Shown here piece after piece: positions 8,663 to 59,750 of a DNA stretch of 64,000 nt. The notes under the pieces are model-generated. The model was not told where the DNA came from. It saw nothing but the letters and a program-made list of their open reading frames with translations, and ran no database searches. The position numbers and the translations under genes are program-made. Origin of the DNA: Octopus sinensis (Eukaryota); contig NC_043002.1 in the NCBI RefSeq assembly GCF_006345805.1, positions 103,726,001-103,790,000 on the forward strand, given 5' to 3'. Within the stretch, counting starts at the first letter, position 1, and each line of letters begins with the position of its first letter.

Positions 8663-8892
8663 AAGGCGGCGAGCTGGCAGAAACGTTAGCACGCTGGGCG
8701 AAATGCGTAGCTGTATTTCGTCTGTCGTCACGTTCCGAGTTCAAATCCGCCGAGGTCGACTTTGCCTTTCATCCTTTCGGGGTCGATGAATTAAGTACCA
8801 GTTACACACTGGGGTCGATATAATCGACTTAATCCGTTTGTCTGTCCTTGTTTGTCCCGTCTGTGTTTAGCCCCTTGTGGGTAGTAAAGAAA
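8663..8892 (+). mobile_element. tRNA-derived SINE, family A (ggcggcgagctggcagaa head)
   Basis: A-box-like head, B-box gagttcaaatcc, body gcctttcatcctttcggggtcgat shared with 15073, 19600, 32600 and 59530. Confidence 0.8.
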
Positions 8893-9796: not shown

Positions 9797-10356
9797 TTAT
9801 TCAATAAAGCTACCTTCAGCTTCAACAAATGCTTCTATGTGAGATCTAAATCATCTACGTGCTCGAATCAATTGGTCCTTGTTCCGTTTGGACATTATTC
9901 TGACTATGGCAGCTTTCAAAGAATCATTGGTATTATGGGTGTGTTCATTAACATCTGTCTCAACAGCGCTCGTCATGTAATAGTACAATGAATTGAAATC
10001 TGAAGAATTAGGAGGCTATGTGATCATAAAAATTTTCAGTCATCCATTCCCGCCTTATTAGAGACGTGTGTGATAGTTCTGAGTCTTACTGGAACATATG
10101 GCCTTCCATTGCATACACTTTCCATCAAGGGATTAACAATTATTTCCAGAACCTCAATGTAGGCGGCATTTAACTCTAAGGCCTTCTGGAAAGAGGCAAG
10201 GAGGCATCTCATCTCCTTCATTGATCACAACCCCTAAAACCATGGCAGTTGCAGGAAATTTTTTATGCATAACACTTGGAACTTCAGAGGGGTCTGCACA
10301 TAACCATCTGTTATTTCTTTTGTTAACTGTTTGATCTTAGTCGACGTTTTTCTCGG
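9797..10356 (-). mobile_element. Decayed Tc1/mariner-superfamily transposase, maT/DD37D-like
   Basis: Minus translation with frameshifts: NKRNNRWLCADPSEVPSVMHKKFPATAMVLGV...NAAYIEVLE...PPNSSDFN...IEAFVEAEGSFIE*. Confidence 0.7.
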
Positions 10357-10374
10357 TTTTTTTTTTTGCCTTTA

Positions 10375-10453
10375 GATGAAGAAAAAACATCCGTCAAATG
10401 CAAATAAAGTAATTAATGTACATAATTCCTCACCTCTTAAATATAGAAATGTA
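10375..10453 (+). mobile_element. PLE pseudo-LTR 3' end fragment, same family as 30248-30375
   Basis: catccgtcaaatgcaaataaagt...ataattcctcacctcttaaatatagaaatgta matches tatccgtcaaatgtaaatagtg...ataattcctcatcttttaaatatagaactgta. Confidence 0.65.
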
Positions 10454-11542
10454 AGTTTCCATATTCTGTTCAATGAGTTTCGTGTTTTCCGACCGTAAAG
10501 ACTTCCTGCTGACATCATGCATCCTGTTCAGAGTTGATGGATTGTACATTCAATGAATTTTGAAGAGACCGAAACAGGTGGACAACTAAAAAAAAACAAA
10601 AAAAACTGTCAGGCGAATATGGAGGCTGTGGCAAAATTTTCCTGTAAGATTTCTTAAGTCTTGAAAGACTTGTGTGGTCGAACATTTTCGTGGTGAAAGA
10701 TAATGCCCTTACGATTAGCTAGTACTAATCGGAACATTGCATTTACTTTGTCCCGCTGGTCACAGTACGTGTCCGAATTGATGGGCGTGTCCGTGGGAGG
10801 AAGCTCATAAAGTCAATACCCTTCCAATATCCTCAGACTGAAAGCATAATCTTCTTCGGGTAAAGTCCTGCTTTGGAGGTTGTTTCTACTTCTTCTTCTC
10901 GTCCCCCACCCATGAAACTACGGGAAGACTAAATCGTTTTAGTCCTCTGTTATTATCATTCTCTTGTTTTTTAAAAAAATCGTTTTCTTCATCCAAAGAA
11001 TCGCAGACGGAAAAACGTTGGGCGAGGTTAGGTTCATTCATTTAATGTGTGACGTAAACTTTGAAGCCGCTGATGTAACATAACTGATGTAAATCTTTAT
11101 TAACGCTCAATTTTGGATATTGGGTAATATGTCCTATCATTTCGGTCGTATAATGAGTGTTGGTGTCGACTTATTCCTTCATTTTGTCGTTGTTAATCTC
11201 AGTTGGGCAGCAAGAGCGCGAATCGACAAATTTCCTGATCGAAATCTTGAATTCAGTCCGTACTCAGGGCATATCTTTCTTCAGGTTTCCTCCGTTTTCT
11301 TGTTTTGTTTTGATGGAAAAGCATGGTGGGCCAATGATGTTCTTGGGATCACCCATTGTCGGGGTGATACCAAGAGCACAAAATACAACTTATCTCGTAG
11401 CAAGTTTGTATCGAACTACGTTGAGGTGTCATGTGTCTAACGATTGCGCTTTCTCATGGATTAGGCAGAAGTTAAAAGCTTATTTTTGTGATTGAAAATT
11501 CATCTCGACAAAAACCAAACGGAACTTTTGGTCAACCCAGTA
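10454..11542 (-). mobile_element. Decayed mariner (DD34D-type) element, 3'-truncated, with 5' TIR
   Basis: Remnants of PTEINNDKMKE (N-terminal), KAGLYPKKIMLSV, IIFHHENVRPH and HLFRSLQNSLN; terminal aacggaacttttggtcaacccagTA. Confidence 0.75.
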
Positions 11543-13608: not shown

Positions 13609-14005
13609 TACTCTTTTCCTCTTTACTCTTTTACTTGTTTCAGTCATTTGACTGCGGCCATGTTGGAGCACCGCCTTTAGTCGAACAAATCGACCCCCAG
13701 GACGTATTCTTTGTAAGCCCAGTACTTATTCTATCGGTCTCTTTTACCGAACCGCAAAGTTACGGGAACGTAAATACAATAGCATCGGTTTTCAAGTGAT
13801 GTTGGGGTGGGGGGCAAACACAGACACACAAACACACACACATATATACGACGGGCTTCTTTCTGTTTCCGTCTACCAAATCCACTCACAAGGCTTTGGT
13901 TGGCCCGAGTCTATAGTAGAAGAGACTTGCCCAAGGTGCCACGCAGTGGGACTGAACCCGGAACCATGTGGTTAGTAAGCAAGCTACTTACCAAACAGTC
14001 ACTCC
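13609..14005 (-). mobile_element. tRNA-derived SINE, family B (OR1-like)
   Basis: Reverse complement of the 44450-44864 copy, with internal (CA)n and a (tactctt)n tail. Confidence 0.85.
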
Positions 14006-14320
14006 AGCGTTTTATTTCATGCTGGAATAAAACGGGGGAAATGTTGAAAGCAACTAATTTTTTTTTTCTTTCTAAACATTTACACTTTTCGAAACTATAT
14101 AACGTTTAAAAAAGAAAGTGATGGAACATGGACCATGTTCAGTATTTTTTGTTTTATTTTTCTCTCTCCATTCATTAGAAAAGTGGATTCTCGAAACGTT
14201 AAAGATATTTTCCAACTTTCATGAACGCTAACCTAATGCATCTTGCTAAACTTTTAAACTCTTCTTCGTGACATTTATTAATTTTCTATCATATACATAC
14301 ACAGACACAGACACACGAAT

Positions 14321-14680: not shown

Positions 14681-14875
14681 AGGTTCGTTGGAAGCTGTTT
14701 TGGGGTTAAATAGCCCTGCTCTTTGAGGAAGTATATTCGACAACACTAATGAGTGAATTTCGTGTACCGAAACCGAGGAGAGAGAGCGAATGAAAGTGTT
14801 AATATATTTATATTCAACTGAATCTTAATTAATATATATATATATACACACACATAGACATGTGTGTGTAAGAAT
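14681..14875 (+). repeat. Left arm of about 200-bp inverted repeat (partner 18619-18829)
   Basis: ctctttgaggaagtatattcgacaacactaatgagtgaatttcgtgtaccgaaaccgaggagagagag...ttcaactgaatcttaattaat recurs reverse-complemented at 18619-18829. Confidence 0.9.
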
Positions 14876-15072
14876 TCTTTTTTTTTTTGCGAACTACATC
14901 AGCTAACATAATTCCGTAAACCCAGGAGCCGGTAAACAGCTAACGGACCTGTTATACCTGACATTCCGCCCTTACTATTCTGTACCTTTGTCCTCTATGT
15001 AACACTGCTCTCTCAATACATAAACATTTAACTTTTTTACTTGTATATTCTTTGTCAGAATATTCTCAGTCT

Positions 15073-15245
15073 AAGGCGGCGAGCTGACAGAATAATTAGG
15101 ACGGCGGTTGAAATGCTTAGCTGTATTTCGGTTGCCTTTTCGTTCCGAGTTAAAATGCGACTTCATCTTTCATCCTTTCGGTGTCGATAAATGAGGTACC
15201 AGTTGCGTACTGGGGGCGTTTCCCAAAGATTTTGAACCTTGAAAA
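15073..15245 (+). mobile_element. tRNA-derived SINE, family A (degenerate)
   Basis: ggcggcgagctgacagaa head; catcctttcggtgtcgataa body. Confidence 0.7.
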
Positions 15246-15279
15246 TATTTTCAGTCTTTCGCTTTTGTCTTTACTTAAG

Positions 15280-15342
<63 letters not shown>

Positions 15343-15519
15343 CATTATATATAAGGGCTTAGTAAAATAAATTACTTTGCCACATACTGAACTCATTAGA
15401 AATAGCAGCTAAAGAAATTTCTTTAGCTATTTCTAATACTTAAAGAAGATCTCTCTCAGATAGTGTTTGCCTAAACCAACTCACAAAGGTATGGGGGAAA
15501 AAACATTAAAAAATCAAGT

Positions 15520-15775
15520 GCAAAGGTTAATTGAGAAGGCGCGGCGGCTGCTTCGACGGCCCGTACGCGTCGGTCTCAGTCTAATATTTGCGCCGCGACC
15601 AATGCGGAAGGCCGACCGTATCGTCGCGACCGGGAGGGACGGGCGCGGATGCGCCGCCCCAGATCCGGCCGAGCGGACGCCGGCGACGCCGCGCAAAACG
15701 CGACGGCTGCCGAACGCCGTTTTTGAGCCCGACGCCCGGGTGCGACCTGCGATCGCGGCTTCGGTTGCATGTATT
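15520..15775 (-). rRNA. 18S: Inverted copy of the 18S fragment (left palindrome arm)
   Basis: Reverse complement of 15811-16066. Confidence 0.85.
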
Positions 15776-15785
15776 GGATAACTGT

Positions 15786-16066
15786 GGATAACTGTGGCAA
15801 TTCTAGAGCTAATACATGCAACCGAAGCCGCGATCGCAGGTCGCACCCGGGCGTCGGGCTCGAAAACGGCGTTCGGCAGCCGTCGCGTTTTGCGCGGCGT
15901 CGCCGGCGTCCGCTCGGCCGGATCTGGGGCGGCGCATCCGCGCCCGTCCCTCCCGGTCGCGACGATACGGTCGGCCTTCCGCATTGGTCGCGGCGCAAAT
16001 ATTAGACTGAGACCGACGCGTACGGGCCGTCGCAGCAGCCGCCGCGCCTTCTCAAATAACCTTTGC
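15786..16066 (+). rRNA. 18S: 18S rRNA-derived fragment (5' domain, expanded V2); not a functional rDNA unit
   Basis: Conserved eukaryotic SSU motif ggataactgtggcaattctagagctaatacatgc, a long GC-rich insert, then gcgcaaatattagactgagacc and ctcaaataacctttg matching the post-V2 conserved motifs. No other rDNA lies nearby. Confidence 0.85.
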
Positions 16067-16335
16067 ACTTGATTTTTTAATGTTTTTTCCCCCATACCTT
16101 TGTGAGTTGGTTTAGGCAAACACTATCTGAGAGAGATCTTCTTTAAGTATTAGAAATAGCTAAAGAAATTTCTTTAGCTGCTATTTCTAATGAGTTCAGT
16201 ATGTGGCAAAGTAATTTATTTTACTAAGCCCTTATATATAATGTAATATTTTGAATTCGCCTAAAATGGTCCCTTTACATACTGAATACTTGGTGAAATT
16301 GATTAATAATTAATAAATTTTACCCTCAATTGTTG

Positions 16336-16370
<35 letters not shown>

Positions 16371-16569
16371 TGTAGTTCATATAACTGGAGAAAGTGATTT
16401 CTTTGTTTACATAGATCTTTGTCACCTTATCTTCTCACCTGAATTCCATTTGTAGCCACTCTTTAACCCGTATACCTTCATTTCGGTAAAGATTTCAGAG
16501 TGTAGGTTCCAATCACTTGAATGCCACTAAATGTCTTCTATTTTGAGCATCTCTGGTCCTCAACTGTTG

Positions 16570-16620
<51 letters not shown>

Positions 16621-16622
<2 letters not shown>

Positions 16623-16860
16623 AATTCCAGACCGGGCGTTGTGTGTGTTTATTGAACAAAAACACCTAAAAGCTCCACGAGTCTTCGGCAGTGGGTGGTG
16701 ATACCTGCTGTACTCTTTCACCACTCTTTATTCCACTCTTTCTTCTCTTGGCCTACTCGCTTAGCCAGCGGGCTGGCGTCCTTCGAAGGCTAAAACAATG
16801 TCAACGCATTGTGACCAGCGATGTGTAACTACATCTGGTCGGTCACATGATCACGTGATA
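16621..16860 (+). mobile_element. SINE family C, 5'-truncated
   Basis: accgggcgttgtgtgtgtttattgaacaaaaacacctaaaagctcc matches the body of 60914-61160. Confidence 0.65.
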
Positions 16861-19989: not shown

Positions 19990-20731
19990 ATTACATTTTG
20001 GGTATGCATTCTCACACTGAGTGAGACGAGACGCAGAGAGGGACGCGTGGGGTGGCCAAAGCATCATGGTTTGTGCTGCTATAGGCTTAAATCGGAGAAT
20101 TGGGCCCCGTGTTTTCCAAAATGTCGGTGCTAGCAGAGTGAATGGCATCACAGCGCAACGCTACGTTGACCAGATCCTAAGACCTCACATCGTGTCCTTC
20201 TTGGAACATCGCTGTAGCCTCGTTCTCCAGCAGGACAATGCTCCCCCCACGCGGCCAGGGTCACTATGGACCTCCTGCGTCAGCAGAATATCAGAACCAT
20301 GCCGTGATCGGCTTTCAACCCGAATTTGAACCGAATTGAACGTCTGTGGTATGATATCCAGAGTAGGCTGAACCAGGTGGTCCCAAGACCAAAATATCCT
20401 GGGGAAATGGAAGCTGCTTTCCTCAGGATGTGGGTACAGGTGCTAATGGCTTTTGTGAACCGCCTCATGCACTCCATGTACCGACGGAGTATATAGCCGT
20501 TTTGAGCACCCAGAAAGGACATACACTGTACTGAACATAGCACGCCCTACAATCTCAAAGTGCTGGATCCGCCCATTTCCAGAACACGTGACAACGACCC
20601 ATAGACTGTGGTCAAAGTGCATCCAAGAAATCTACTTTTTCAGATTTATAAAAATTCATCTACGACATAATGAAATGAAAACATTTTTTCACAGACACAC
20701 ACCTCTTGCTTTTATTTTGCGGTTCAGCGTA
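19990..20731 (+). mobile_element. Decayed Tc1-like (DD34E) transposon, 3' half with right TIR
   Basis: WGGQSIMVCAAIG...YVDQILRPHIV...LQQDNAPP, frameshift, then NPNLNRIERLWYDIQSRL...QKGHTLY*; terminal ttgcttttattttgcggttcagcgTA. Confidence 0.8.
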
Positions 20732-30375: not shown

Positions 30376-30689
30376 AAGTCACCTTAGAAATTTAATATTA
30401 ATAGATTTTGTAGATTATCTTCTTATATCTGTTATAGAAAAATAAGTCTACTTCTGTCGAATTGTCTATTCAAAATGTGAACGTCTTTTACGTATTGCTT
30501 ATACTCTAAATACTGTCATCCTGAACCAGTAATATCCACATAAAAGATGAAACGCAAAGTGGAAACTCTAAGGATCACTAAATTATCACGAGATTATTAA
30601 GCACATTTGGATAAAGTAATTAAGCGATATAATTATGTATTGCAAATAAGAAAAGAAATACCTCATATCTTTAATGAAGTTGAACAATA

Positions 30690-31097
30690 TACGATTCAGG
30701 CATATTCCTACCACTCTATGTCACGCTGGTGAGACCCATATTGGAGTACGGGATTCAAGCCTCCTCTTATCTCCTCAAAGACATACAGCATCTCGAAAGA
30801 GTCCAGAAGCTGGCTACCCGCATGGTTCATGGTCTCAAAAATTTGTCTTATGAAGAATGCTCTACCTGCGACGATTTCATCTCAATCGAAGGAGAGGAGC
30901 TTTCACCGTCCGGGTTGCGGATCCTTGGAACAAGCTGCCAGACGAGATGGTGAAGATGCCAACGACCGCTTTGTTCAAAGTCTCCCTTGACCTCAAGTGG
31001 CCTGAACTCTTTACATGAACACCACCCTGTACTTAACTCCATGTCCCCGTACATGGCCTTGTTATTTGCTTTTGAGCCAAATTAACTAACTAACTAA
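30690..31097 (+). mobile_element. CR1/L2-like LINE 3' end
   Basis: IFLPLYVTLVRPILEYGIQAS...DIQHLERVQKLATRMVHGLKNLSYEE; (ACTA)n tail at 31083-31097. Confidence 0.8.
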
Positions 31098-31229: not shown

Positions 31230-31909
31230 TGAGGAGATGACGAACAAAACTTTGGTTTAAATCACTCACTGCCGATAAACAATTCAAATATCCGATATTT
31301 CTTTTAATAGTATTTGCTTATAATAGTATTTGTCTTATAACCGGTAGGGAGAAGAGAAATACCGGCATCCAACGATAAATAAGGTAGTTATCTAGGTAAG
31401 GTGTTTTTATCTGCTTGGTGGGATATGAAAGGTTTAGTGCACCTTGAGATTCTTAAACTCACACCAAAGGATAAGAAATAAGATTTACTGTGAACAGCTT
31501 CAGCGGCTTAAGTCAGCGTTAGGCGAAAAACGAATGTCTTTGGTTGCAAGACGAAATGTGTTCTTGAATCAGGCCATATTCATTGAAAATGACATTCTAA
31601 AGACTAGAGTTGATTGCTTAGCAAACGATGGCCTAACACTCACTACCCCACCATCACCATATTCGCCGGACATTGCTCCATCTGATTATCATATATTTAT
31701 TCTGCAGTCTTCAAAATTATTTGGTCGAAGAAAATATGAATTCTGTAGACGTGGTCAGAACAGTACTGGAGGAATAGTTTTCACCACGGACAAGTGAATT
31801 TTGGAATAGGAACCTTGCAAATCTACCAGATTGATAGAAGAGCATCGTAGAAAATGAACGTCTCAATTTTGTATAAAAAAAACTGCATTGTTAATGGGAC
31901 GACCCAATA
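31230..31909 (+). mobile_element. Decayed mariner (DD34D) 3' portion with right TIR
   Basis: KVFLSAWWDMKG, IYCEQLQRLK, PYSPDIAPSDYHIF; terminal ttaatgggacgacccaaTA. Confidence 0.8.
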
Positions 31910-32599: not shown

Positions 32600-32825
32600 A
32601 GGTCGGTGAGCTGGCAAGCCGGGCGAAATGATAGATGGTATTCTGTCTGCCGTTACGTTCTGAGTTCAAACTCCGCCGAGGTCGAATTTGCCTTTCATCC
32701 TTTCGGGGTCGATTCAATAAGTACCACCTACGCACTGCAGTCGATGTAATCGACTTAAATCCTCTGTCTGTCCTTGTTTGTCCCCTCTATGTTTAGCCAC
32801 CCCAGTGGGCAATAAAGAGATAAAT
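32600..32825 (+). mobile_element. tRNA-derived SINE, family A
   Basis: Same body and tail as 8663-8892. Confidence 0.8.
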
Positions 32826-37200: not shown

Positions 37201-37820
37201 ATATATATACATACGTATGTATGTGTATGCACGTGTGTGCGAGCCCAGGCGCGCGTGTCTATTGTCACAAATGGGGTGAGATTTACTACAGCTATTTGAG
37301 ACACGTTTTTATTTTTTCATGAGGAACTAAATGACGTGATGCAAATCACTCGTTTCTATCAGTGGAATTAAAATCAAAGTAAAATGAAATATTTAGTATT
37401 TTTTTGCGCAAATCGTATACGATATGCATTTACTGTTACATCTCGTTACTGGTTGGGGAATGCAATTCTAATGTTAAACATTGGAGATAATAAGTATGTC
37501 TACACATCTACAGGATGGAGAAAGATGAAAAGGAAGAAAGGAAACACACATCCCAGTTATAAGAATCTAAAGAATTTAGGTGATGTCGCCATTTTCAGAT
37601 GACATAGAAAGGGTGGGTCAATGATTATCCTTTGTGACATGAAGACAAGCGAGGAAACAAAATGATAAATAATAAGAATTAAAATTAAATAAAATTAACA
37701 TTGAATGATATTAAAAGAGAATAATGAAAAACCATGAAATTAAGCACTTCATATGTATATACACACAGACACACACATGTTTGACCATCCAATAAACAAA
37801 CGTTGGTGAGGACTTTTGTT

Positions 37821-38226
37821 TACTCTTTTACTCTTTTATTTGTTTCAGTCATTTGACCGCGGCCATGCTGGAGCACGGCATTTAGTCGAGCAAATCGACC
37901 CCGGGACTTATTCTTTGTAAGCCCAGTACGTATTCTATCGGTCTCTTTTGCGAACCGCTAAGTGACGGGGACGTAAACACACCAGCATCGGTTGTCAAGC
38001 AATGTTAGGGGGACAAACACAGACACACAAACACACACATGAATATACATACATATACATATAGACGACGGGCTTTGAGTTTCCGTCTACCAAATCCACT
38101 CACAAGCCATTGGTCAGCCCGGGGCTATAGCAGAAGACACTTGCCCAAGATGCCACGCAGTGGGACTGAACCCGGAAACATGTGGTTGGTTAGCAAGCTA
38201 CTTACCACACAGCCAATCCTGCACCT
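37821..38226 (-). mobile_element. tRNA-derived SINE, family B (OR1-like)
   Basis: Full-length reverse complement of the 44450 copy. Confidence 0.85.
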
Positions 38227-38445
38227 ATATATATATTTTTTTTCTCAACCTCCTGCAACCGCATATGTTTCTAACAATAATAACTCTTTGCTAGAGTGAG
38301 ACATGTTGTCCCATATATGATTGAGGAGTGAATCATGATCTAAAACGCTTCACCTGTTGGTGCTAATAATTTAGACATAGCCTGAGCCTATACTAACCGA
38401 AACATATCTTCTAAGTTATATATATATAAGCCCTTATTAATGATA

Positions 38446-44408: not shown

Positions 44409-44449
44409 ATATATATTATATATATATATAATATATATCATGTATATAT

Positions 44450-44864
44450 GCGCAGGAGTGGCTGTGTGGTAAGTAGCTTGTAAACCAACCACATGGTTCC
44501 AGGTTCAGTCCCACTGCGTGGCATCTTGGGCAAGTGTCTTCTGCTATAGCCCCGGGCCGACCTGTGCCTTATGAGTCGATTTGGTAGACGGAAACTGAAA
44601 GAAGCCTGTCGTATATATGTATATATATATATATATGTATGTGTGTGTATGTGTTTGTGTGTCTGTGTTTATCCCCCTAGTATCGCTTGACAAACAATGC
44701 TGGTGTGTTTACGTCCCCGTCACCTAGCGGTTCGGCAAAAGAGACCGATATAATAAGTACTGGACTTACAAAGAAAAAGTCCCGGGGTCGATTTGCTCGA
44801 TTAAAGGCGGTGCTCCAGCATGGCCGCAGTCAAATGACTGAAACAGGTAAAAGAGTAAAAGAGT
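44450..44864 (+). mobile_element. tRNA-derived SINE, family B (OR1-like)
   Basis: tggctgtgtggtaag head, ggttcagtcc B-box-like motif, internal microsatellite, (aaagagt)n tail. Confidence 0.85.
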
Positions 44865-44949
44865 ATATGTGTGCATATATATATGTATATACATGCATGT
44901 ATATATGTATATATGTGTGTATGTATATGTAGATATACATATATATATA

Positions 44950-48163: not shown

Positions 48164-48199
<36 letters not shown>

Positions 48200-48585
48200 G
48201 AGAGAGAGAGAGAGAGAGAGGGGAGATAGTTACACTGGTAAAGAAAGAGAATATAAAGAACGAGTAGACGAGAGAGGGAAACGAAGGAGAGAGAGGTTTC
48301 GTGAAAATGTAATTGGTAACTTTTGATTCAACAGGGAAGTACGATGTTTGACTTGACGGAGATAAAGTGCGTTGCACTACGAATGCTTAGAGAACACGAT
48401 AGAACTGCATGTACGTGCGTACGTGTGTGTGCTTGTGTACGTGTGTGTGTGTGTCAGGGAGTGAATGTGAGCATCTTTTTGTGTGTGTATATATATATGT
48501 GTGTATAGTCAGACGCCATGATAGATCGTTAGCCACTACACATATTTTTTCTCTCCTTTTTTCTCTCCTTGTTTTTTTCTGTGTC

Positions 48586-48716
48586 CCTTTCTGTAGTAGA
48601 GCGTAGGCTCGAAACGTAAAAGACTTTTTCTTATCCTGAGCTATTATACTAATACATATGTTTGTTTTGTACACCACATGTCTTCGTCTTTTGTTTTTTT
48701 CGTAAACTTTCCCTAT
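48586..48716 (+). mobile_element. PLE-tail-like relic with degenerate hammerhead motif (duplicated at about 52157-52287)
   Basis: ccttt-CTGTAGTA-gagc gtag gctc-GAAAC-GTA-aaaga: 4-bp stem II, two core substitutions relative to CTGAAGA; tail ends in (TA)n. Confidence 0.5.
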
Positions 48717-49370
48717 ATATATACACATAGACACACACATACACACACACACTTGCACACACACAATCACACTTACATATATTCTGATTCTGCTGAGGTC
48801 AGATTTAATCAGGCATATATTTGGTAATTCACAGAAGTGAAAATAGACAATAAATAAAAGAAGACGAAAACGCGCCGAGCACGTATAAGAAAATTGATTC
48901 ATACCAATGTTAATACATTCAACCGGTTTCACTTTTTTATGAATGTTCATAAGTTTGGAAGGACGTGGATCAGTGTAACAACTATATTGTTTCATGCCGT
49001 TGATCGAAGATGACTTCGAATTTTAAGAGAGAGTGTGACTCAGATCGCCATCTCTTGACGTACAAATTCATTGATTGAGAAGGTCACGCTATGAAGTAAA
49101 GTAACTGTTTTCGTTAATTTTCTTCTATGTCCATATTTTAAGGTCAAGTTATATAATAGCGTGAAGCTCAATTCCAGTAGTTATGTCACGTGGCTCTCAG
49201 AAGAATGTCTTTGAAGAGTGAAAGTTGCACTTGAATTAGAGCTGTAAGGGACTGAGAAATATGCCGAGCAGCTCTATGATCAAATATTAACTTAATTAAC
49301 CACGGTGTAGCGACATTTTACTGCTATAAAACACCTCTACTGAATAATTCAGACACACACATACATGTAT

Positions 49371-49407
<37 letters not shown>

Positions 49408-49860
49408 ACGAGGCTTCCAATTAGGGAAACGTTGTGCTAGAACACAAAAAAGGATAAATTCATGAAAGGAATGAAAATTAAAAACATTTACCATCTCAAC
49501 TAATATATATATAATATATATATATATATAATATATATAATATATTATAATAATATATTTTATATATAATGAGGGTGAAAAAAGACAAACCTCTGCCGAT
49601 GATTTATAGATGTTGTGTAAGTAAAATTGCATATACATTAATAATGAAACAAGTGTTCAGGGGTAATCAATTTTTTTTCGTTATATTTCACTTTCTTACG
49701 TTAAATGTATGTTATTTCTTCTGAAAACTCTTCTGTGGTATACAGAACGGAGCTATTTTAGCACTAGAGTAACCACATACTGGTCACTCCTTAATTTATA
49801 TATTATATATATGTATATATACGTATATATATGTATATATACATATATATGTGTATATAT

Positions 49861-49918
<58 letters not shown>

Positions 49919-50376
49919 CGGAAGCCCGCGTTCGCACAGGTACGCACCCCCAGCAGGCGCCAGAAAACAGACACACACACATACAAGCATCAAAGTCTCA
50001 AACAGGGACAACTGTGGCTTCCGTTAACGAATAAATGAAGTTAATGAAAAGCATGAAAATGGCAATGAAAGAGAATTGACGAATAAAAACCACAACAATT
50101 TAAACAAACGATCGATTACTTAAATGAAAACATATCTAACCGATTGACTAATAATGAAAAAGTGAAATTTAATCATTGCGTGTGCCCGTAATGTTGACGT
50201 AATGACTTTCCCTAGACAATAAAAGATGTTTTAACACATAAATTCACACAAGGTTTTGCAAACAAAATACAAACGCGCAACATATACATACATACATACA
50301 TAATACATACATACATACATATACATTACATACATAAATACATACACATATTATATAGTATATATATATATATATA

Positions 50377-50594
50377 CCAGAGTAAACACATAAATGTGAA
50401 ACAAGGTGGAAAACAGAGTACTCAAAAACCAGTGGTAGAGTAATATGCTTTATTTAAAGCAGCAGAAAATTCTACAAAACCTGTTACATATATATGTATG
50501 GATGTGAACATGCATACATACAACTGTCCGATGAACGGCAATGTGAAACTCAGAATAACAGGTCTTGTAGAATTTTCTGCTGCTTTAAATAAAG
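50377..50594. mobile_element. Fold-back PLE-tail-like relic in (TA)n (duplicated at about 53951-54168)
   Basis: Inverted arms 50448-50486 and 50556-50594; ccgatga-acggcaatgt-gaaactc at 50528-50551. Confidence 0.55.
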
Positions 50595-50626
<32 letters not shown>

Positions 50627-51630
50627 CATATAATGTGTGTATGTATGTATGCATGAATGGGATATAGTAAGAGTGATATTTTTTCATTTATCGCTTTCAT
50701 CTCTATTTGAGAGATTCATCATAAATGTTTTATGTACATCCATATATATGTGCATTATATGTGTGTGTGTGTGTGTGTGTCTGTGTGTCTGTGTGTGTCT
50801 GTGTGTGTATGTGTGTGCGTGTGTGTGTAATTATGAGTGTGGTGAAGACTGTGGAGGCTTGGTTGGAAAAAGCGAAAAGGTATTTTTGCAATGATGTTAC
50901 GTTCTCATTAATCAATTAAAGGAGTAGTTAGAAATGGTCTCCTCAACCACCTCCACGTCTCCCTTTGACCGGGTAGAGGAGGTGGCATCCAGTGATAGTT
51001 CCAGGACCTTACTAGGGTCCTGGGAGCAGTTCTTTTTAATATGAACTGCAGGCACGAGTGAGACTTGGGGGTACGTCCCTCAATATCACCGGATTCCTGC
51101 AGCCAGCCATTTAAAACAAAATCTGGAAAAACCAGATCTGTTGCGACTGAAGGGGTCCACAGGGTCAAAACCACTCTTGACCCTTCCCAATCGACCGCCG
51201 GCGATACCCTTACATTTAAGAGCCTGGGCCCGCCATCCCCCAGTCCCCGTCGGATGATATCTTCAATCTAACTCGCCTCTCGCAGTACGACGAGAGGAAC
51301 AGAATTTCGTTGCCCTCCAAGGGCTGGCTCGCGAAATTGCGAGTCTCCTCCGGAGTGTCAAACAGCAACCATACGGTTGAATGCTTGATACCGCGGGATA
51401 TGTATTTCACACAGATAAACATATAGTCTTTCAGTTCTTTTTCTATAGTTAGTATTGGGAAGACGGAGACAGTATCAAGAACTTAGATTAAGTTCTAACC
51501 ACCACCGCCCTATCCTCCAAATCTTTTAACCACTGTTGGGTGGGATTATTTCCCACTCTAAGACAGGGTTCTTCTTTTTAATTTCCTTCTCTACGATGTA
51601 AAAAAAAACAGTTTTAAAGCAGTTCATAAA

Positions 51631-51730
51631 NNNNNNNNNNNNNNNNNNNNNNNNNNNNNNNNNNNNNNNNNNNNNNNNNNNNNNNNNNNNNNNNNNNNNN
51701 NNNNNNNNNNNNNNNNNNNNNNNNNNNNNN
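51631..51730. other. Assembly gap (100 N)
   Basis: Run of exactly 100 N. Confidence 1.
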
Positions 51731-53431
51731 TTAAGAGAGAGAGAGAGAGAAGAGGAGAGGAGAGAGAGTGATGAGAGGAGAGAGGGGAGAGAGAGAGAGA
51801 GAGAGCAGGGGAGATACACTGGGTAAAGAAATATACAGAACGAGAGAGGGAAACGAAGGAGAGAGAGGTTCGTGAAAATGTAATTGGTAACTTTTGATTC
51901 AACAGGGAAGTACGATGTTTGACTTGACGGAGATAAAGTGCGTTGCACTACGAATGCTTAGAGAACACGATAGAACTGCATGTACGTGCGTACGTGTGTG
52001 TGCTTGTGTACGTGTGTGTGTGTGTCAGGGAGTGAATGTGAGCATCTTTTTGTGTGTGTATATATATATGTGTGTATAGTCAGACGCCATGATAGATCGT
52101 TAGCCACTACACATATTTTTTCTCTCCTTTTTTCTCTCCTTGTTTTTTTCTGTGTCCCTTTCTGTAGTAGAGCGTAGGCTCGAAACGTAAAAGACTTTTT
52201 CTTATCCTGAGCTATTATACTAATACATATGTTTGTTTTGTACACCACATGTCTTCGTCTTTTGTTTTTTTCGTAAACTTTCCCTATATATATACACATA
52301 GACACACACATACACACACACACTTGCACACACACAATCACACTTACATATATTCTGATTCTGCTGAGGTCAGATTTAATCAGGCATATATTTGGTAATT
52401 CACAGAAGTGAAAATAGACAATAAATAAAAGAAGACGAAAACGCGCCGAGCACGTATAAGAAAATTGATTCATACCAATGTTAATACATTCAACCGGTTT
52501 CACTTTTTTATGAATGTTCATAAGTTTGGAAGGACGTGGATCAGTGTAACAACTATATTGTTTCATGCCGTTGATCGAAGATGACTTCGAATTTTAAGAG
52601 AGAGTGTGACTCAGATCGCCATCTCTTGACGTACAAATTCATTGATTGAGAAGGTCACGCTATGAAGTAAAGTAACTGTTTTCGTTAATTTTCTTCTATG
52701 TCCATATTTTAAGGTCAAGTTATATAATAGCGTGAAGCTCAATTCCAGTAGTTATGTCACGTGGCTCTCAGAAGAATGTCTTTGAAGAGTGAAAGTTGCA
52801 CTTGAATTAGAGCTGTAAGGGACTGAGAAATATGCCGAGCAGCTCTATGATCAAATATTAATTAATTAACCACGGTGTAGCGACCATTTTACTGCTATAA
52901 AACACCTCTACTGAATAATTCAGACCACACACATACATGTATGTTTATATATATATATATAATATATATATATACAATACGAGGCTTCCAATTAGGGAAA
53001 CGTTGTGCTAGAACACAAAAAAGGATAAATTCATGAAAGGAATGAAAATTAAAAACATTTACCATCTCAACTAATATATATATAATATATATATATATAT
53101 AATATATATAATATATTATAATAATATATTTTATATATAATGAGGGTGAAAAAAGACAAACCTCTGCCGATGATTTATAGATGTTGTGTAAGTAAAATTG
53201 CATATACATTAATAATGAAACAAGTGTTCAGGGGTAATCAATTTTTTTTCGTTATATTTCACTTTCTTACGTTAAATGTATGTTATTTCTTCTGAAAACT
53301 CTTCTGTGGTATACAGAACGGAGCTATTTTAGCACTAGAGTAACCACATACTGGTCACTCCTTAATTTATATATTATATATATGTATATATACGTATATA
53401 TATGTATATATACATATATATGTGTATATAT

Positions 53432-53489
<58 letters not shown>

Positions 53490-53909
53490 CGGAAGCCCGC
53501 GTTCGCACAGGTACGCACCCCCAGCAGGCGCCAGAAAACAGACACACACACATACAAGCATCAAAGTCTCAAACAGGGACAACTGTGGCTTCCGTTAACG
53601 AATAAATGAAGTTAATGAAAAGCATGAAAATGGCAATGAAAGAGAATTGACGAATAAAAACCACAACAATTTAAACAAACGATCGATTACTTAAATGAAA
53701 ACATATCTAACCGATTGACTAATAATGAAAAAGTGAAATTTAATCATTGCGTGTGCCCGTAATGTTGACGTAATGACTTTCCCTAGACAATAAAAGATGT
53801 TTTAACACATAAATTCACACAAGGATTTTTGCAAACAAAATACAAACGCGCAACATATACATACATACATACATACATACATACATACATACATACATAC
53901 ATTACATAC

Positions 53910-53952
<43 letters not shown>

Positions 53953-55200
53953 AGAGTAAACACATAAATGTGAAACAAGGTGGAAAACAGAGTACTCAAA
54001 AAACCAGTGGTAGAGTATATGCTTTATTTAAAGCAGCAGAAAATTCTACAAAACCTGTTACATAGTATATGTATGGATGGAACATGCATACATACAACTT
54101 CCGATGAACGGCAATGTGAAACTCAGAATAACAGGTCTTGTAGGATTTTCTGCTGCTTTAAATAAAGATATATATATATATATATATATTATACATACAT
54201 ATAATGTGTGTATGTATGTATGCATGAATGGGATATAGTAAGAGTGATATTTTTTCATTTATCGCTTTCATCTCTATTTGAGAGATTCATCATAAATGTT
54301 TTATGTACATCCATATATATGTGCATTATATGTGTGTGTGTGTGTGTGTGTCTGTGTGTCTGTGTGTGTCTGTGTGTGTATGTGTGTGCGTGTGTGTGTA
54401 ATTATGAGTGTGGTGAAGACTGTGGAGGCTTGGTTGGAAAAAGCGAAAAGGTATTTTTGCAATGATGTTACGTTCTCATTAATCAATTAAAGGAGTAGTT
54501 AGAAATGGTCTCCTCAACCACCTCCACGTCTCCCTTTGACCGGGTAGAGGAGGTGGCATCCAGTGATAGTTCCAGGACCTTACTAGGGTCCTGGGAGCAG
54601 TTCTTTTTAATATGAACTGCAGGCACGAGTGAGACTTGGGGGTACGTCCCTCAATATCACCGGATTCCTGCAGCCAGCCATTTAAAACAAAATCTGGAAA
54701 AACCAGATCTGTTGCGACTGAAGGGGTCCACAGGGTCAAAACCACTCTTGACCCTTCCCAATCGACCGCCGGCGATACCCTTACATTTAAGAGCCTGGGC
54801 CCGCCATCCCCCAGTCCCCGTCGGATGATATCTTCAATCTAACTCGCCTCTCGCAGTACGACGAGAGGAACAGAATTTCGTTGCCCTCCAAGGGCTGGCT
54901 CGCGAAATTGCGAGTCTCCTCCGGAGTGTCAAACAGCAACCATACGGTTGAATGCTTGATACCGCGGGATATGTATTTCACAGATAACATATAGTCTTTC
55001 AGTTCTTTTTCTATAGTTAGTATTGGGAAGACGGAGACAGTATCAAGAACTTTAGATTAAGTTCTAACCACCACCGCCCTCTCCTCCATATCTTTTAACC
55101 ACTGCTTGGGTGGGATTATTTCCCACTCTAAGACAGGGTTCTTCTTTTTAATTTCCTTCTCTACGATGTAAAAAAAAACAGTTTTAAAGCAGTTCATAAA
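51731..55200 (+). repeat. Copy 2 of the 3.47-kb duplication
   Basis: Begins exactly at the gap; its first about 130 nt are an indel-rich version of 48164-48300. Confidence 0.9.
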
Positions 55201-59296: not shown

Positions 59297-59529
59297 CATA
59301 CATGGATGCACAAATTTTTATCTTATATATGTATGTTTATATGTATGAATGTTTATGGATGGATTTATAACTTGTAATGTTTATAAAACCAATGCAAACA
59401 TAAATTACACAGCGTGAAAAAATTACGTTATTGCAGAGTGGGCTGATACGTTTTAATTGGGTATAAAAAAAGGGACAGAGCTTCGTGTTTCGCCCCTCTG
59501 TTTGTTGCTAGGATTCAAAAGACTTTGTA

Positions 59530-59750
59530 GGCGGGGAGCTGGCAGAATCCTTAGCACGCCGTGCGAAGTGCTTATCGGTATTTCGTCTGTCTTTACATTC
59601 TGAGTTCAAATTCCGCCCAGGGCGCTTTGCTTTTCATCCTTTCGGGGTCGATAAATTAGGTACCAGTTGCGTACTGGGGATCTATCTAATCGAGTGGCCC
59701 CTTCCCCCAAACTTTCGGGCCTTGTGCCTGGACTAGAAAAGAAAAGTATT
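59530..59750 (+). mobile_element. tRNA-derived SINE, family A
   Basis: ggcggggagctggcagaa head; gagttcaaattcc; catcctttcggggtcgataa. Confidence 0.8.

What the first reader, a model, noticed from the sequence alone, without database searches (positions are those of the whole stretch)
15337..16249. Isolated 18S rRNA fragment folded into a 913-bp palindrome capped by retroelement-like arms
Seen: 439-bp arms with only 3 mismatches and a 35-nt spacer; the inner about 255 bp of each arm is a very GC-rich 18S V2 fragment in an AT-rich background, and the outer about 180 bp is non-rDNA sequence ending in TA-rich DNA. Established: rDNA normally lies in tandem arrays; PLE reverse transcriptases generate inverted 5'-truncated copies and can carry host sequence; long hairpin RNAs are Dicer substrates. 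Inference: a PLE-type RT switched template onto 18S rRNA and folded back. If transcribed from either strand, the locus would give a 439-bp dsRNA and small RNAs antisense to 18S, i.e. a possible dispersed rRNA-targeting endo-siRNA source. The few arm mismatches suggest recent origin or gene conversion.
Basis: partly seen in the sequence, partly recalled or inferred. Interest (0 to 1): 0.85.

Follow-up and report, generated by a model that had tools for sequence, protein, structure and literature searches.

The report
18S fragment–retroelement chimera folded into palindrome
In an octopus-type genome, a 272-base piece of 18S ribosomal RNA is fused to the tail end of a dispersed repeat that sits in (TA)n microsatellites, and 439 bases of this fusion were copied back on themselves to make a near-perfect hairpin. 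It looks like a one-off scar of reverse transcription or DNA repair, with no evidence of a function.

Summary
The arms are 15337-15775 and 15811-16249 (439 nt, 3 mismatches) with a 35-nt spacer. The inner 237 nt of each arm plus the spacer is genuine 18S V2: it matches the Rfam SSU model at positions 138-173 and aligns to a real 18S gene (L001), with 100% identity in the conserved flanks.

The new result concerns the outer arm. It is not a free-standing cap. It is the first 202 nt of a 292-nt dispersed repeat that runs past the palindrome to 16339 and ends at an (AT)15 run. Two Octopus vulgaris loci carry shorter copies with the same right end and different left ends, each between (TA)n runs. 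That pattern resembles 5'-truncated retroelement copies inserted in (TA)n.

The 18S lies in sense orientation upstream of the repeat's sense strand. So the right arm is the original and the left arm is a partial inverted copy.

Best reading (about 0.5): target-primed reverse transcription into (TA)n, a template switch onto 18S rRNA, then fold-back. Main rival (about 0.3): later break repair at an older repeat copy.

A Penelope-like origin is compatible, because Naiad elements target (TA)n, but it is unproven: no RT, GIY-YIG or hammerhead was found. The siRNA function is untested.

The parts
15283..15340 (.). (TA)29 microsatellite on the left of the whole insertion (upstream half of the presumed target). 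Its last ATAT overlaps the end of the left arm, which is a possible joining microhomology.
15337..15538 (-). Left outer arm: an inverted copy of positions 1-202 of the dispersed repeat. It lacks the repeat's last 90 nt.
   Evidence: nhmmer E 3e-51 against the right-hand copy
15539..15775 (-). Left inner arm: 18S rRNA V2 fragment in antisense on the + strand. It carries the derived state at both 18S mismatches (15553, 15724) relative to the real 18S gene L001.
15776..15810 (+). Spacer or loop, 35 nt. It consists of an 8-10-nt tandem duplicate (GGATAACTGT x2; 18S has one copy) followed by 18S sense sequence of the conserved helix that is absent from the left arm.
15811..16047 (+). Right inner arm: 18S rRNA V2 fragment in sense. 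18S homology ends at 16047 (GCCGCCGCGC|CTTCTC), whereas the real 18S continues TCGTTCGCGG.
16048..16249 (+). Right outer arm: positions 1-202 of the dispersed repeat, sense strand.
16250..16339 (+). Continuation of the same repeat (positions 203-292) beyond the palindrome, ending in ...TTTTACCCTCAATTGTTGAAAT. It aligns in one block with the distal outer arm to O. vulgaris L004 1565-1756. The last 36 nt are also found in L002 7270-7306.
16338..16367 (.). (AT)15 microsatellite directly after the repeat's 3' end (downstream half of the target, or the element's tail).
15395..15438 (.). Nested 44-nt hairpin inside the left outer arm (TTAGAAATAGC..GCTATTTCTAA).
   Evidence: (D6)
16148..16191 (.). 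The same nested hairpin in the right outer arm. The O. vulgaris copy L004 is 5'-truncated inside it.

Best explanation
This is a single chimeric retro-insertion into a (TA)n microsatellite. Inferred sequence of events: a nick in (TA)n primed reverse transcription of the RNA of a (TA)n-associated repeat from its 3' end. After 292 nt the reverse transcriptase switched template onto 18S rRNA at about position 410 of the expanded V2 region and copied it down to the conserved helix at about position 140. The nascent cDNA slipped, giving the 8-10-nt duplicate, and folded back on itself with a 35-nt loop. It then copied 439 nt of itself (18S, then the first 202 nt of the repeat). Its TA-rich end (..AATGTAATAT) was joined to the upstream (TA)n by ATAT microhomology. 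A PLE-like priming on both strands could give a similar picture. Shown: the anatomy, the 18S identity, that the outer arm belongs to a dispersed repeat which continues past the right arm, that other copies share the 3' end and sit in (TA)n, and the sense-sense orientation. Inferred: RNA as the template, a single event, and the fold-back order. The locus is most likely a neutral mutational scar. If it lies in a transcript it would form a 439-bp dsRNA, but nothing shows that it does.
For: The palindrome and its 3 mismatches are confirmed. 18S identity and exact end points are established. The repeat runs from 16048 to 16339 across the palindrome boundary: window 16155-16345 aligns as one block to O. 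vulgaris L004 1565-1756 (72% over 204 nt, blastn E 8e-19, nhmmer E about 5e-10). The terminal 36 nt recur in L002 at 35/36 identity. All three copies share the right end, have different left ends (292, 185 and 36 nt) and lie between (TA)n runs, which is the pattern of 5'-truncated retro-copies. The 18S sense strand sits directly 5' of the repeat's sense strand with no intervening TA units, as an RT jump from element RNA to rRNA predicts; a random DNA capture would give this orientation half the time. The spacer contains 18S sequence missing from the left arm, so the right arm came first and the left arm is the copy. Both 18S mismatches are derived in the left arm. The host is octopus-like. According to PMC8557442, Naiad PLEs in Octopus spp. 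target (TA)n and make inverted copies. According to PMC11167929, a PLE protein cleaves and extends both strands.
Against: No reverse transcriptase or endonuclease remnant was found in the window. Pfam on ORF pieces from 8-24 kb found none, and there is no YxDD or GIY-YIG motif in any frame. That Pfam test was weak, since it also missed visibly Tc1-like pieces. The repeat family rests on only three copies in about 190 kb of octopus DNA, and its full-length or coding form is unknown. No target-site duplication can be read inside (TA)n. There is no microhomology at the repeat/18S junction or at the fold-back point. The window and L004 copies are only 72% alike, so the family may be old, while the arms (99.3%) and the intact 18S flanks look young. 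That combination would fit a later repair event at an old copy. Every step can also be performed by DNA repair polymerases.
Confidence: 0.5

Rival explanations
1. Two-step origin by DNA repair without a reverse transcriptase. An old 5'-truncated copy of the repeat already lay in the (TA)n tract. A later double-strand break at the fragile (TA)n/repeat border was repaired by synthesis that copied a stretch of rDNA (or captured an rDNA fragment), folded back with a 35-nt loop, copied 439 nt of itself, unwound and was joined to the other (TA)n end.
For: Foldback insertion at breaks with a 41-nt loop, synthesis, unwinding and end joining is documented in yeast. Captured or templated insertions from rDNA and inverted two-fragment insertions are documented there too (PMC11724301). 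The 8-10-nt templated duplicate in the loop and the ATAT overlap at the left junction are typical of such repair. The repeat family looks old (72% between copies), while the arms are 99.3% alike and the 18S flanks are undecayed.
Against: It needs two independent events at the same base. It needs the break end to have lost every TA unit, so that 18S abuts the repeat directly. The 18S orientation would match the repeat's sense strand only by a 1-in-2 coincidence. The foldback insertions seen in yeast are mostly under 150 bp (PMC11724301), against 439 here.
Confidence: 0.3
2. The 18S-plus-repeat unit is itself a mobile family: a non-autonomous retroelement with an 18S-derived head. The two arms would then be two cDNAs of the same chimeric RNA, primed from both strands as PLE proteins can do.
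For: This would explain the identical chimeric junction in both arms without any fold-back. The left arm starts at a TA-rich internal site of the repeat (position 202) that could pair with a (TA)n primer. A PLE protein extends both strands and initiates internally (PMC11167929). rRNA-derived modules in TEs are known for 5S and 28S (PMC10946416).
Against: There is no second copy of the junction or of any 18S piece in the window or in about 130 kb of Octopus DNA. The 18S part is essentially undiverged from a functional 18S gene while the repeat copies differ by 28%, so the fusion is much younger than the family. A protein-level search with the arm ORF found only a true rDNA contig.
Confidence: 0.08
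3. Assembly or library artefact, such as a fold-back chimeric read or an MDA inversion, carried into the consensus.
For: The assembly is imperfect nearby: a 100-N gap at 51631-51730 is flanked by a 3.5-kb, 98.4% duplicate. Near-perfect palindromes are a known artefact class.
Against: The palindrome is only 913 bp and lies between two different unique flanks, whereas a missed-adapter or fold-back read is palindromic over its whole length. The loop is 18S sequence, not adapter. The right arm runs on seamlessly into the rest of a repeat that is independently attested in O. vulgaris. The three arm mismatches include a CpG-to-CpA change of the kind expected in real DNA.
Confidence: 0.05
4. Functional overlay: the locus is transcribed, and its 439-bp dsRNA is diced into siRNAs, some antisense to 18S, that act on rRNA.
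For: The only support is the fold, -927 kcal/mol with a 35-nt loop. hpRNA loci of this geometry make endo-siRNAs in Drosophila (PMC10317233). Antisense rRNA siRNAs silence rDNA in C. elegans (PMC8450093).
Against: There are no expression data. There is no sign of selection or conservation, and this is a single young locus. Known hpRNAs target selfish or testis genes, and known risiRNAs are made by RdRPs from rRNA itself, not from dispersed hairpin loci. Targeting a variable expansion of the most abundant cellular RNA has no obvious benefit.
Confidence: 0.04

Closest known systems
Chimeric retrocopies made by RT template switching (LINE-1-mediated U6/U3/5S/7SL-L1 chimeras in mammals; recalled from the work of Buzdin and colleagues, not re-read here)
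   Same: The 5' part is a fragment of an abundant structural RNA in sense orientation. It is fused without spacer to the 3' part of a retroelement that ends at the target site.
   Different: The partner here is an uncharacterised (TA)n-associated octopus repeat, not L1. The captured RNA is an internal piece of 18S. No poly(A) tail or readable target-site duplication is present. The chimera is followed by a 439-nt fold-back copy.
Penelope-like elements, Naiad clade (PMC8557442; PMC11167929)
   Same: Preference for (TA)n targets. Heavy 5' truncation. Inverted copy abutting the direct copy. An extension present on one side only. No hammerhead ribozyme. Naiad families are reported in Octopus spp.
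   Different: No RT/GIY-YIG ORF, pLTR or tandem arrangement is linked to this repeat. The one-sided extension is 90 nt rather than 30-40. The inverted copy repeats the same chimeric junction, which points to self-copying rather than a second independent cDNA. Naiads are described as long inactive in cephalopods.
Foldback (inverted) templated insertions at double-strand breaks (PMC11724301)
   Same: A 3' end folds back with a loop of a few tens of nt (41 there, 35 here), copies itself, unwinds and is joined to the other end with 0-5 nt of microhomology. rDNA is a known donor of insertions.
   Different: Those events are mostly 2-150 bp and were seen in yeast mutants or stationary cells. Here the arms are 439 nt, in an animal germ line, at the 5' end of a retroelement copy.
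Dispersed rDNA pseudogenes and rDNA-derived TE modules (PMC5381670; PMC10946416)
   Same: rRNA gene sequence lies outside the rDNA array, next to or inside repeats.
   Different: The human cases are degraded, near-full-length units. The TE modules listed are 5S, 28S or IGS, and no 18S module is listed. This is a single, undecayed 272-nt internal piece.
Drosophila hpRNA loci and C. elegans risiRNAs (PMC10317233; PMC8450093)
   Same: The geometry matches an hpRNA: a long, near-perfect inverted repeat with a short loop. Products antisense to rRNA, if made, would resemble risiRNAs in target.
   Different: There is no evidence of transcription or small RNAs. hpRNAs derive from their protein-coding targets. 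risiRNAs are RdRP products of erroneous rRNA, not products of a hairpin locus.

Membership tests
Eukaryotic 18S rRNA (fragment) | Match to the SSU rRNA model and to a bona fide 18S gene | tested here: met
   Rfam RF01960 positions 138-173 match at 15783-15818 (E 9e-4). The fragment is 89% identical over 264 window bases (279 alignment columns) to L001, which scores 1071 bits as SSU_rRNA_eukarya. The conserved flanks are 100% identical.
Retroelement-derived dispersed repeat | Several genomic copies share one (3') end and differ at the other (5' truncation) | tested here: met
   Three copies of 292, 185 and 36 nt have the same right end. With only three copies this is suggestive, not proof.
Retroelement-derived dispersed repeat | Link to a reverse-transcriptase-encoding element with the same 3' end | not testable with these tools
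   No octopus genome or TE library can be searched by DNA here. No RT core was found in the window.
Penelope-like element (PLE) | ORF with PLE-type RT plus GIY-YIG endonuclease | tested here: not met
   No Pfam RT or GIY-YIG hit in ORF pieces from 8-24 kb, and no YxDD or GIY..YIG motif in six frames of the 64 kb. A non-autonomous or truncated copy would not carry one, so this does not exclude mobilisation by a PLE.
Penelope-like element (PLE) | Pseudo-LTR or partial tandem arrangement | tested here: not met
   No direct repeat of the family was found in the window or in L004.
Penelope-like element (PLE) | Hammerhead ribozyme in the pLTR (canonical clades; absent in Naiads) | tested here: not met
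   No Rfam hammerhead at gathering score in the window, nor at E <= 10 in 14800-16800.
Penelope-like element (PLE), Naiad clade | Insertion bias for (TA)n microsatellites | tested here: met
   All three copies lie between (TA)n runs. The bias is described in PMC8557442. It is not unique to PLEs.
Penelope-like element (PLE) | Inverted 5'-truncated copy next to the direct copy, with a 30-40-bp tail on one side only | tested here: inconclusive
   An inverted copy is present and the direct copy extends further on one side. However, the extension is 90 nt, and the two copies share the same 18S junction.
RT template-switch chimeric retrocopy | Cellular RNA fragment in sense orientation fused 5' to a retroelement 3' part | tested here: met
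   18S sense (15776-16047) directly precedes the repeat's sense strand (16048-16339).
RT template-switch chimeric retrocopy | Target-site duplication flanking the whole chimera | tested here: inconclusive
   Both flanks are (TA)n, so a duplication cannot be read.
hpRNA / endo-siRNA locus | Long inverted repeat able to form dsRNA | tested here: met
   439-bp stem with a 35-nt loop, -926.7 kcal/mol, z = -57.
hpRNA / endo-siRNA locus | Transcription and Dicer-dependent 21-23-nt small RNAs from the arms | not testable with these tools
   No RNA data are available here.
MITE / foldback DNA transposon | Terminal inverted repeats at both true ends of the family, with copies sharing both ends | tested here: not met
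   The family's right end is at 16339, 90 nt beyond the palindrome. The L004 and L002 copies have no inverted termini and differ at the left end.

The most novel reading that the evidence does not exclude
The hairpin is transcribed, for example from a host intron or a neighbouring repeat. Its products include siRNAs antisense to the 18S V2 expansion, so that a retroelement accident has created a dispersed, heritable RNAi trigger against the animal's own rRNA or rDNA. This would be a hairpin-encoded counterpart of nematode risiRNAs.
Probability: 0.04. Interest if true: 0.8.

Novelty: new member of a known kind. Interest (0 to 1): 0.35.

Why it matters
The locus preserves junction-level detail of an unusual event: a (TA)n-associated octopus repeat fused to an internal piece of 18S rRNA and then copied back on itself. 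If the one-step reading is right, it records template switching and snap-back synthesis by a cephalopod retroelement enzyme. It would also show that this repeat family, possibly Naiad-type PLE-driven, was active recently, whereas Naiads are thought long dead in cephalopods. No 18S-derived TE module is listed in the 2024 review of rDNA in TEs (PMC10946416). On a practical level, such fragments can contaminate 18S barcoding, and the hairpin is a likely fragile site. The siRNA idea would matter much more, but it has no support yet.

Tried and rejected
1. Rfam at gathering score over the whole window found nothing. The 18S piece is detected only when the arm is searched alone. High-scoring 'Mcr7', 'isrG' and miRNA hits at the centre are artefacts of a long GC-rich hairpin.

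2. Metagenome scans for the V2 sequence and for the outer arm, and a viral-contig scan, found nothing. The JGI sets seem to hold no DNA of this clade.

3. Exact look-ups of window ORFs in the gene-position index found nothing, so no independent assembly of the locus could be retrieved.

4. Mitochondrial or coding origin of the outer arm: there are stops in all frames under codes 1 and 5, and no tRNA was found.

5. MITE or foldback transposon: rejected, because the family end lies 90 nt outside the palindrome and the other copies lack inverted termini.

6. Helitron: the 3' end lacks CTRR and a GC-rich hairpin (by eye).

7. Site-specific rDNA element inserted in 18S: unlikely. The junction lies in a species-variable expansion, and the repeat's other copies are in (TA)n, not in rDNA.

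8. Pfam on concatenated ORF pieces proved insensitive: it also missed visibly Tc1-like pieces. The lack of RT hits is therefore weak evidence.

9. The third protein search, with a zinc-finger protein used to harvest Octopus loci, returned mostly vertebrate proteins and only three new Octopus loci, none with a further repeat copy.

10. The supplement of the Naiad paper, which might hold Octopus consensus sequences, is not held.

Full report
OBSERVATION

The inverted repeat is exactly as described. The arms are 15337-15775 and 15811-16249, 439 nt each, separated by 35 nt. There are three mismatches, at 15530/16056, 15553/16033 and 15724/15862. As a single strand the 913 nt fold into one hairpin of -926.7 kcal/mol, against -304 +/- 11 for shuffled sequence. 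Neither half occurs anywhere else in the 64-kb window.

THE CORE IS 18S

Rfam finds nothing at gathering score, because only a short internal piece of the gene is present. When the right arm is searched alone, SSU_rRNA_eukarya positions 138-173 match 15783-15818 (E 9e-4). The universal motif GGATAACTGTGGCAATTCTAGAGCTAATACATGC occurs once, at 15786-15819.

A protein-level search with the ORF that runs through the arms found one hit, an ORF on an ENA metagenome scaffold. That scaffold, L001, is a genuine 18S gene, scoring 1071 bits to the Rfam model. It aligns to window 15784-16047 at 89%. All differences are indels or substitutions inside the V2 expansion, and 75 nt and 97 nt on either side are identical.

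18S homology stops sharply at 16047. The window reads GCCGCCGCGC|CTTCTCAAAT, while the gene continues TCGTTCGCGG. The 18S part is therefore:
- 15539-15775, antisense;
- 15776-16047, sense, which includes the whole spacer.

The outer arms are 202 nt each. The spacer carries 18S sequence of the conserved helix that the left arm lacks, plus an 8-10-nt tandem duplicate (GGATAACTGT twice, where the gene has one copy). At both 18S mismatches the right arm has the state seen in L001 and the left arm is derived; one change is CpG to CpA.

HOST

The window is 34% GC, and 7% of its bases lie in dinucleotide runs of six or more units. It is full of SINE-like repeats. A translated SINE copy hits only 'hypothetical predicted proteins' of Octopus vulgaris. 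The window's SINEs are 82-90% identical to copies in O. vulgaris loci fetched from GCA_951406725.2. The host is therefore an octopus or a close relative. The organism behind L001 is unknown.

WHAT THE OUTER ARM IS

This is the main new result. Window 16155-16345 comprises the distal half of the right outer arm, the 54 nt of supposedly unique right flank, a 36-nt motif and the start of an (AT)n run. This stretch aligns as one block to O. vulgaris L004 1565-1756 (72% over 204 nt, blastn E 8e-19; nhmmer E about 5e-10). The alignment runs straight through the palindrome's right end at 16249.

In L004 the element is 185 nt long and lies between (TA)22 and (TA)19. The last 36 nt (TAATAATTAATNAATTTTACCCTCAATTGTTGAAAT) occur again in O. 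vulgaris L002, 35 of 36 identical, again between two (TA)n runs. In the window the element spans 16048-16339 (292 nt) and is followed by (AT)15. The whole structure is preceded by (TA)29.

So there are three copies with one common right end, three different left ends, and a position inside (TA)n in every case. That is the signature of 5'-truncated retro-copies of an element that targets or ends in (TA)n. No more copies were found in a further 66 kb of Octopus DNA.

Three consequences follow:
- The right arm is the original, continuous with the rest of the repeat.
- The left arm is a partial inverted copy that lacks the last 90 nt.
- The 18S fragment sits in sense orientation directly 5' of the repeat's sense strand, with no TA units between them.

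MECHANISM

The simplest single-event account runs as follows.
1. Target-primed reverse transcription starts in (TA)n and copies the repeat RNA from its 3' end.
2. After 292 nt the enzyme jumps onto 18S rRNA, the most abundant RNA in the cell, and copies it from about position 410 down to the helix at about position 140.
3. The cDNA slips, producing the short duplicate, and folds back with a 35-nt loop.
4. It copies 439 nt of itself.
5. Its end, which falls in a TA-rich patch of the repeat (..TATATATAATGTAATAT), is joined to the upstream (TA)n. The ATAT overlap is visible at 15337-15340.

The order of the last steps is fixed by the spacer. It holds sense 18S sequence with no antisense partner in the left arm, so the strand that reached position 140 must have been made first.

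I put this reading at about 0.5. The anatomy is shown; the RNA template and the single event are inferred.

MAIN RIVAL

The main rival (about 0.3) uses the same fold-back chemistry without an RT. An old repeat copy sat in the microsatellite. A later break at the fragile (TA)n border was repaired by synthesis templated on rDNA. A foldback, unwinding and end joining then followed. Exactly this foldback scheme, with a 41-nt loop, as well as insertions from rDNA and inverted two-fragment insertions, has been documented at yeast breaks (PMC11724301).

In its favour:
- The repeat copies differ by 28%, so the family may be old.
- The arms differ by only 0.7% and the 18S flanks are undecayed, so the fusion looks young.

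Against it:
- It needs two events at the same base.
- It needs loss of every TA unit at the junction.
- It needs a 1-in-2 coincidence of orientation.
- The arms are three times longer than the longest events reported in yeast.

IS IT A PENELOPE-LIKE ELEMENT?

Naiad-clade PLEs prefer (TA)n. They lack hammerheads and are heavily 5'-truncated. They often carry an inverted copy and a one-sided 30-40-bp tail, and Naiad families are present in Octopus spp. (PMC8557442). A purified PLE protein cleaves and extends both strands and initiates internally (PMC11167929).

The defining features, however, were not found. There is no RT or GIY-YIG remnant in the window (the Pfam test was insensitive). There is no pLTR or tandem arrangement and no hammerhead. 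The one-sided extension is 90 nt rather than 30-40. The two arms share one chimeric junction, which argues for self-copying rather than two independent cDNAs. Naiads are also reported to be only old remnants in cephalopods. PLE involvement is therefore possible but unproven; another (TA)n-associated non-LTR element would fit as well.

OTHER READINGS

- A mobile family with an 18S head is unlikely (0.08). No second junction is known, and the fusion is far younger than the family.
- An assembly artefact is unlikely (0.05). The palindrome is short and lies between different unique flanks. Its loop is 18S, not adapter. Its right arm continues into a repeat that is attested independently in another assembly. 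The assembly does show a flaw 35 kb away (see below).
- A MITE or foldback transposon is rejected, because the family end lies outside the palindrome and the other copies have no inverted termini.

FUNCTION

Nothing here bears on transcription. The hairpin has the geometry of a Drosophila hpRNA (PMC10317233), and antisense rRNA siRNAs exist in nematodes (PMC8450093). But those come from different sources, and a single young locus with no sign of conservation is best treated as a neutral scar. I give the siRNA idea about 0.04.

VERDICT

The object is a new example of known processes: an rRNA-retroelement chimera combined with a fold-back inverted duplication. Its junctions are unusually legible, and it has some value for understanding a (TA)n-targeting repeat in octopus.

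The decisive tests are genome-wide copy and junction counts, the orthologous empty site in related animals, spanning long reads, and small-RNA mapping. None of these can be run with the collections available here.

Noticed in passing
window 48166-51630 and 51750-55200, around the N run 51631-51730: A 3.5-kb stretch is present twice at 98.4% identity on either side of a 100-N gap. It looks like two overlapping contig ends or haplotypes that were scaffolded without being merged, rather than a real tandem duplication.
   Followed up: partly
window 13622-14009, 37820-38230, 44445-44865 (and fragments elsewhere): Copies of an abundant SINE-like repeat of about 400 bp with an internal (CA)n(TA)n stretch. 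They are 82-90% identical to copies in O. vulgaris loci L002 and L004. Translations of this repeat are annotated as 'hypothetical predicted proteins' in O. vulgaris.
   Followed up: partly
window 15060-15275, 8663-8817, 59529-59679, 32692-32737: A second SINE-like family (translation motif SAEV.FAFHPFGVD). One copy ends right at the (TA)29 run that precedes the palindrome, so the target microsatellite may be that repeat's tail.
   Followed up: no
window about 10300-11000 (-), 20021-20500 (+), 31438-31794 (+), 30684-30950 (+): Decayed transposase pieces: mariner/Tc1-like, with weak Pfam Transposase_1 hits and HDNARPH / PPYSPD-like motifs. There is also a C-terminal remnant of a non-LTR reverse transcriptase (..LVRPILEYG..LERVQ..). 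None is adjacent to the palindrome.
   Followed up: partly
L002 7264-7306 and L004 1520-1790 (O. vulgaris): Short copies of the repeat are embedded in the middle of long (TA)n tracts, so many 'interrupted' (TA)n microsatellites in octopus may be insertion sites of this family.
   Followed up: partly
L001 2457-2600 (ENA metagenome scaffold): The 18S 5' end (CATATGCTTGTCTCAAAGCTTAAGCCATGCAAGTGTAAGTTCA) appears twice on either side of an N run, which is a scaffolding artefact in that record. Rfam also placed model position 1 at 2096, about 350 nt inside the gene, probably misled by the V2 expansion.
   Followed up: no
window 15514-16119 (-): The GC-rich 18S arms create a spurious 201-aa ORF that runs through the hairpin. 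A similar antisense-18S ORF had been called as a protein on the metagenome scaffold, and that is the only reason a real 18S gene could be retrieved here.
   Followed up: yes
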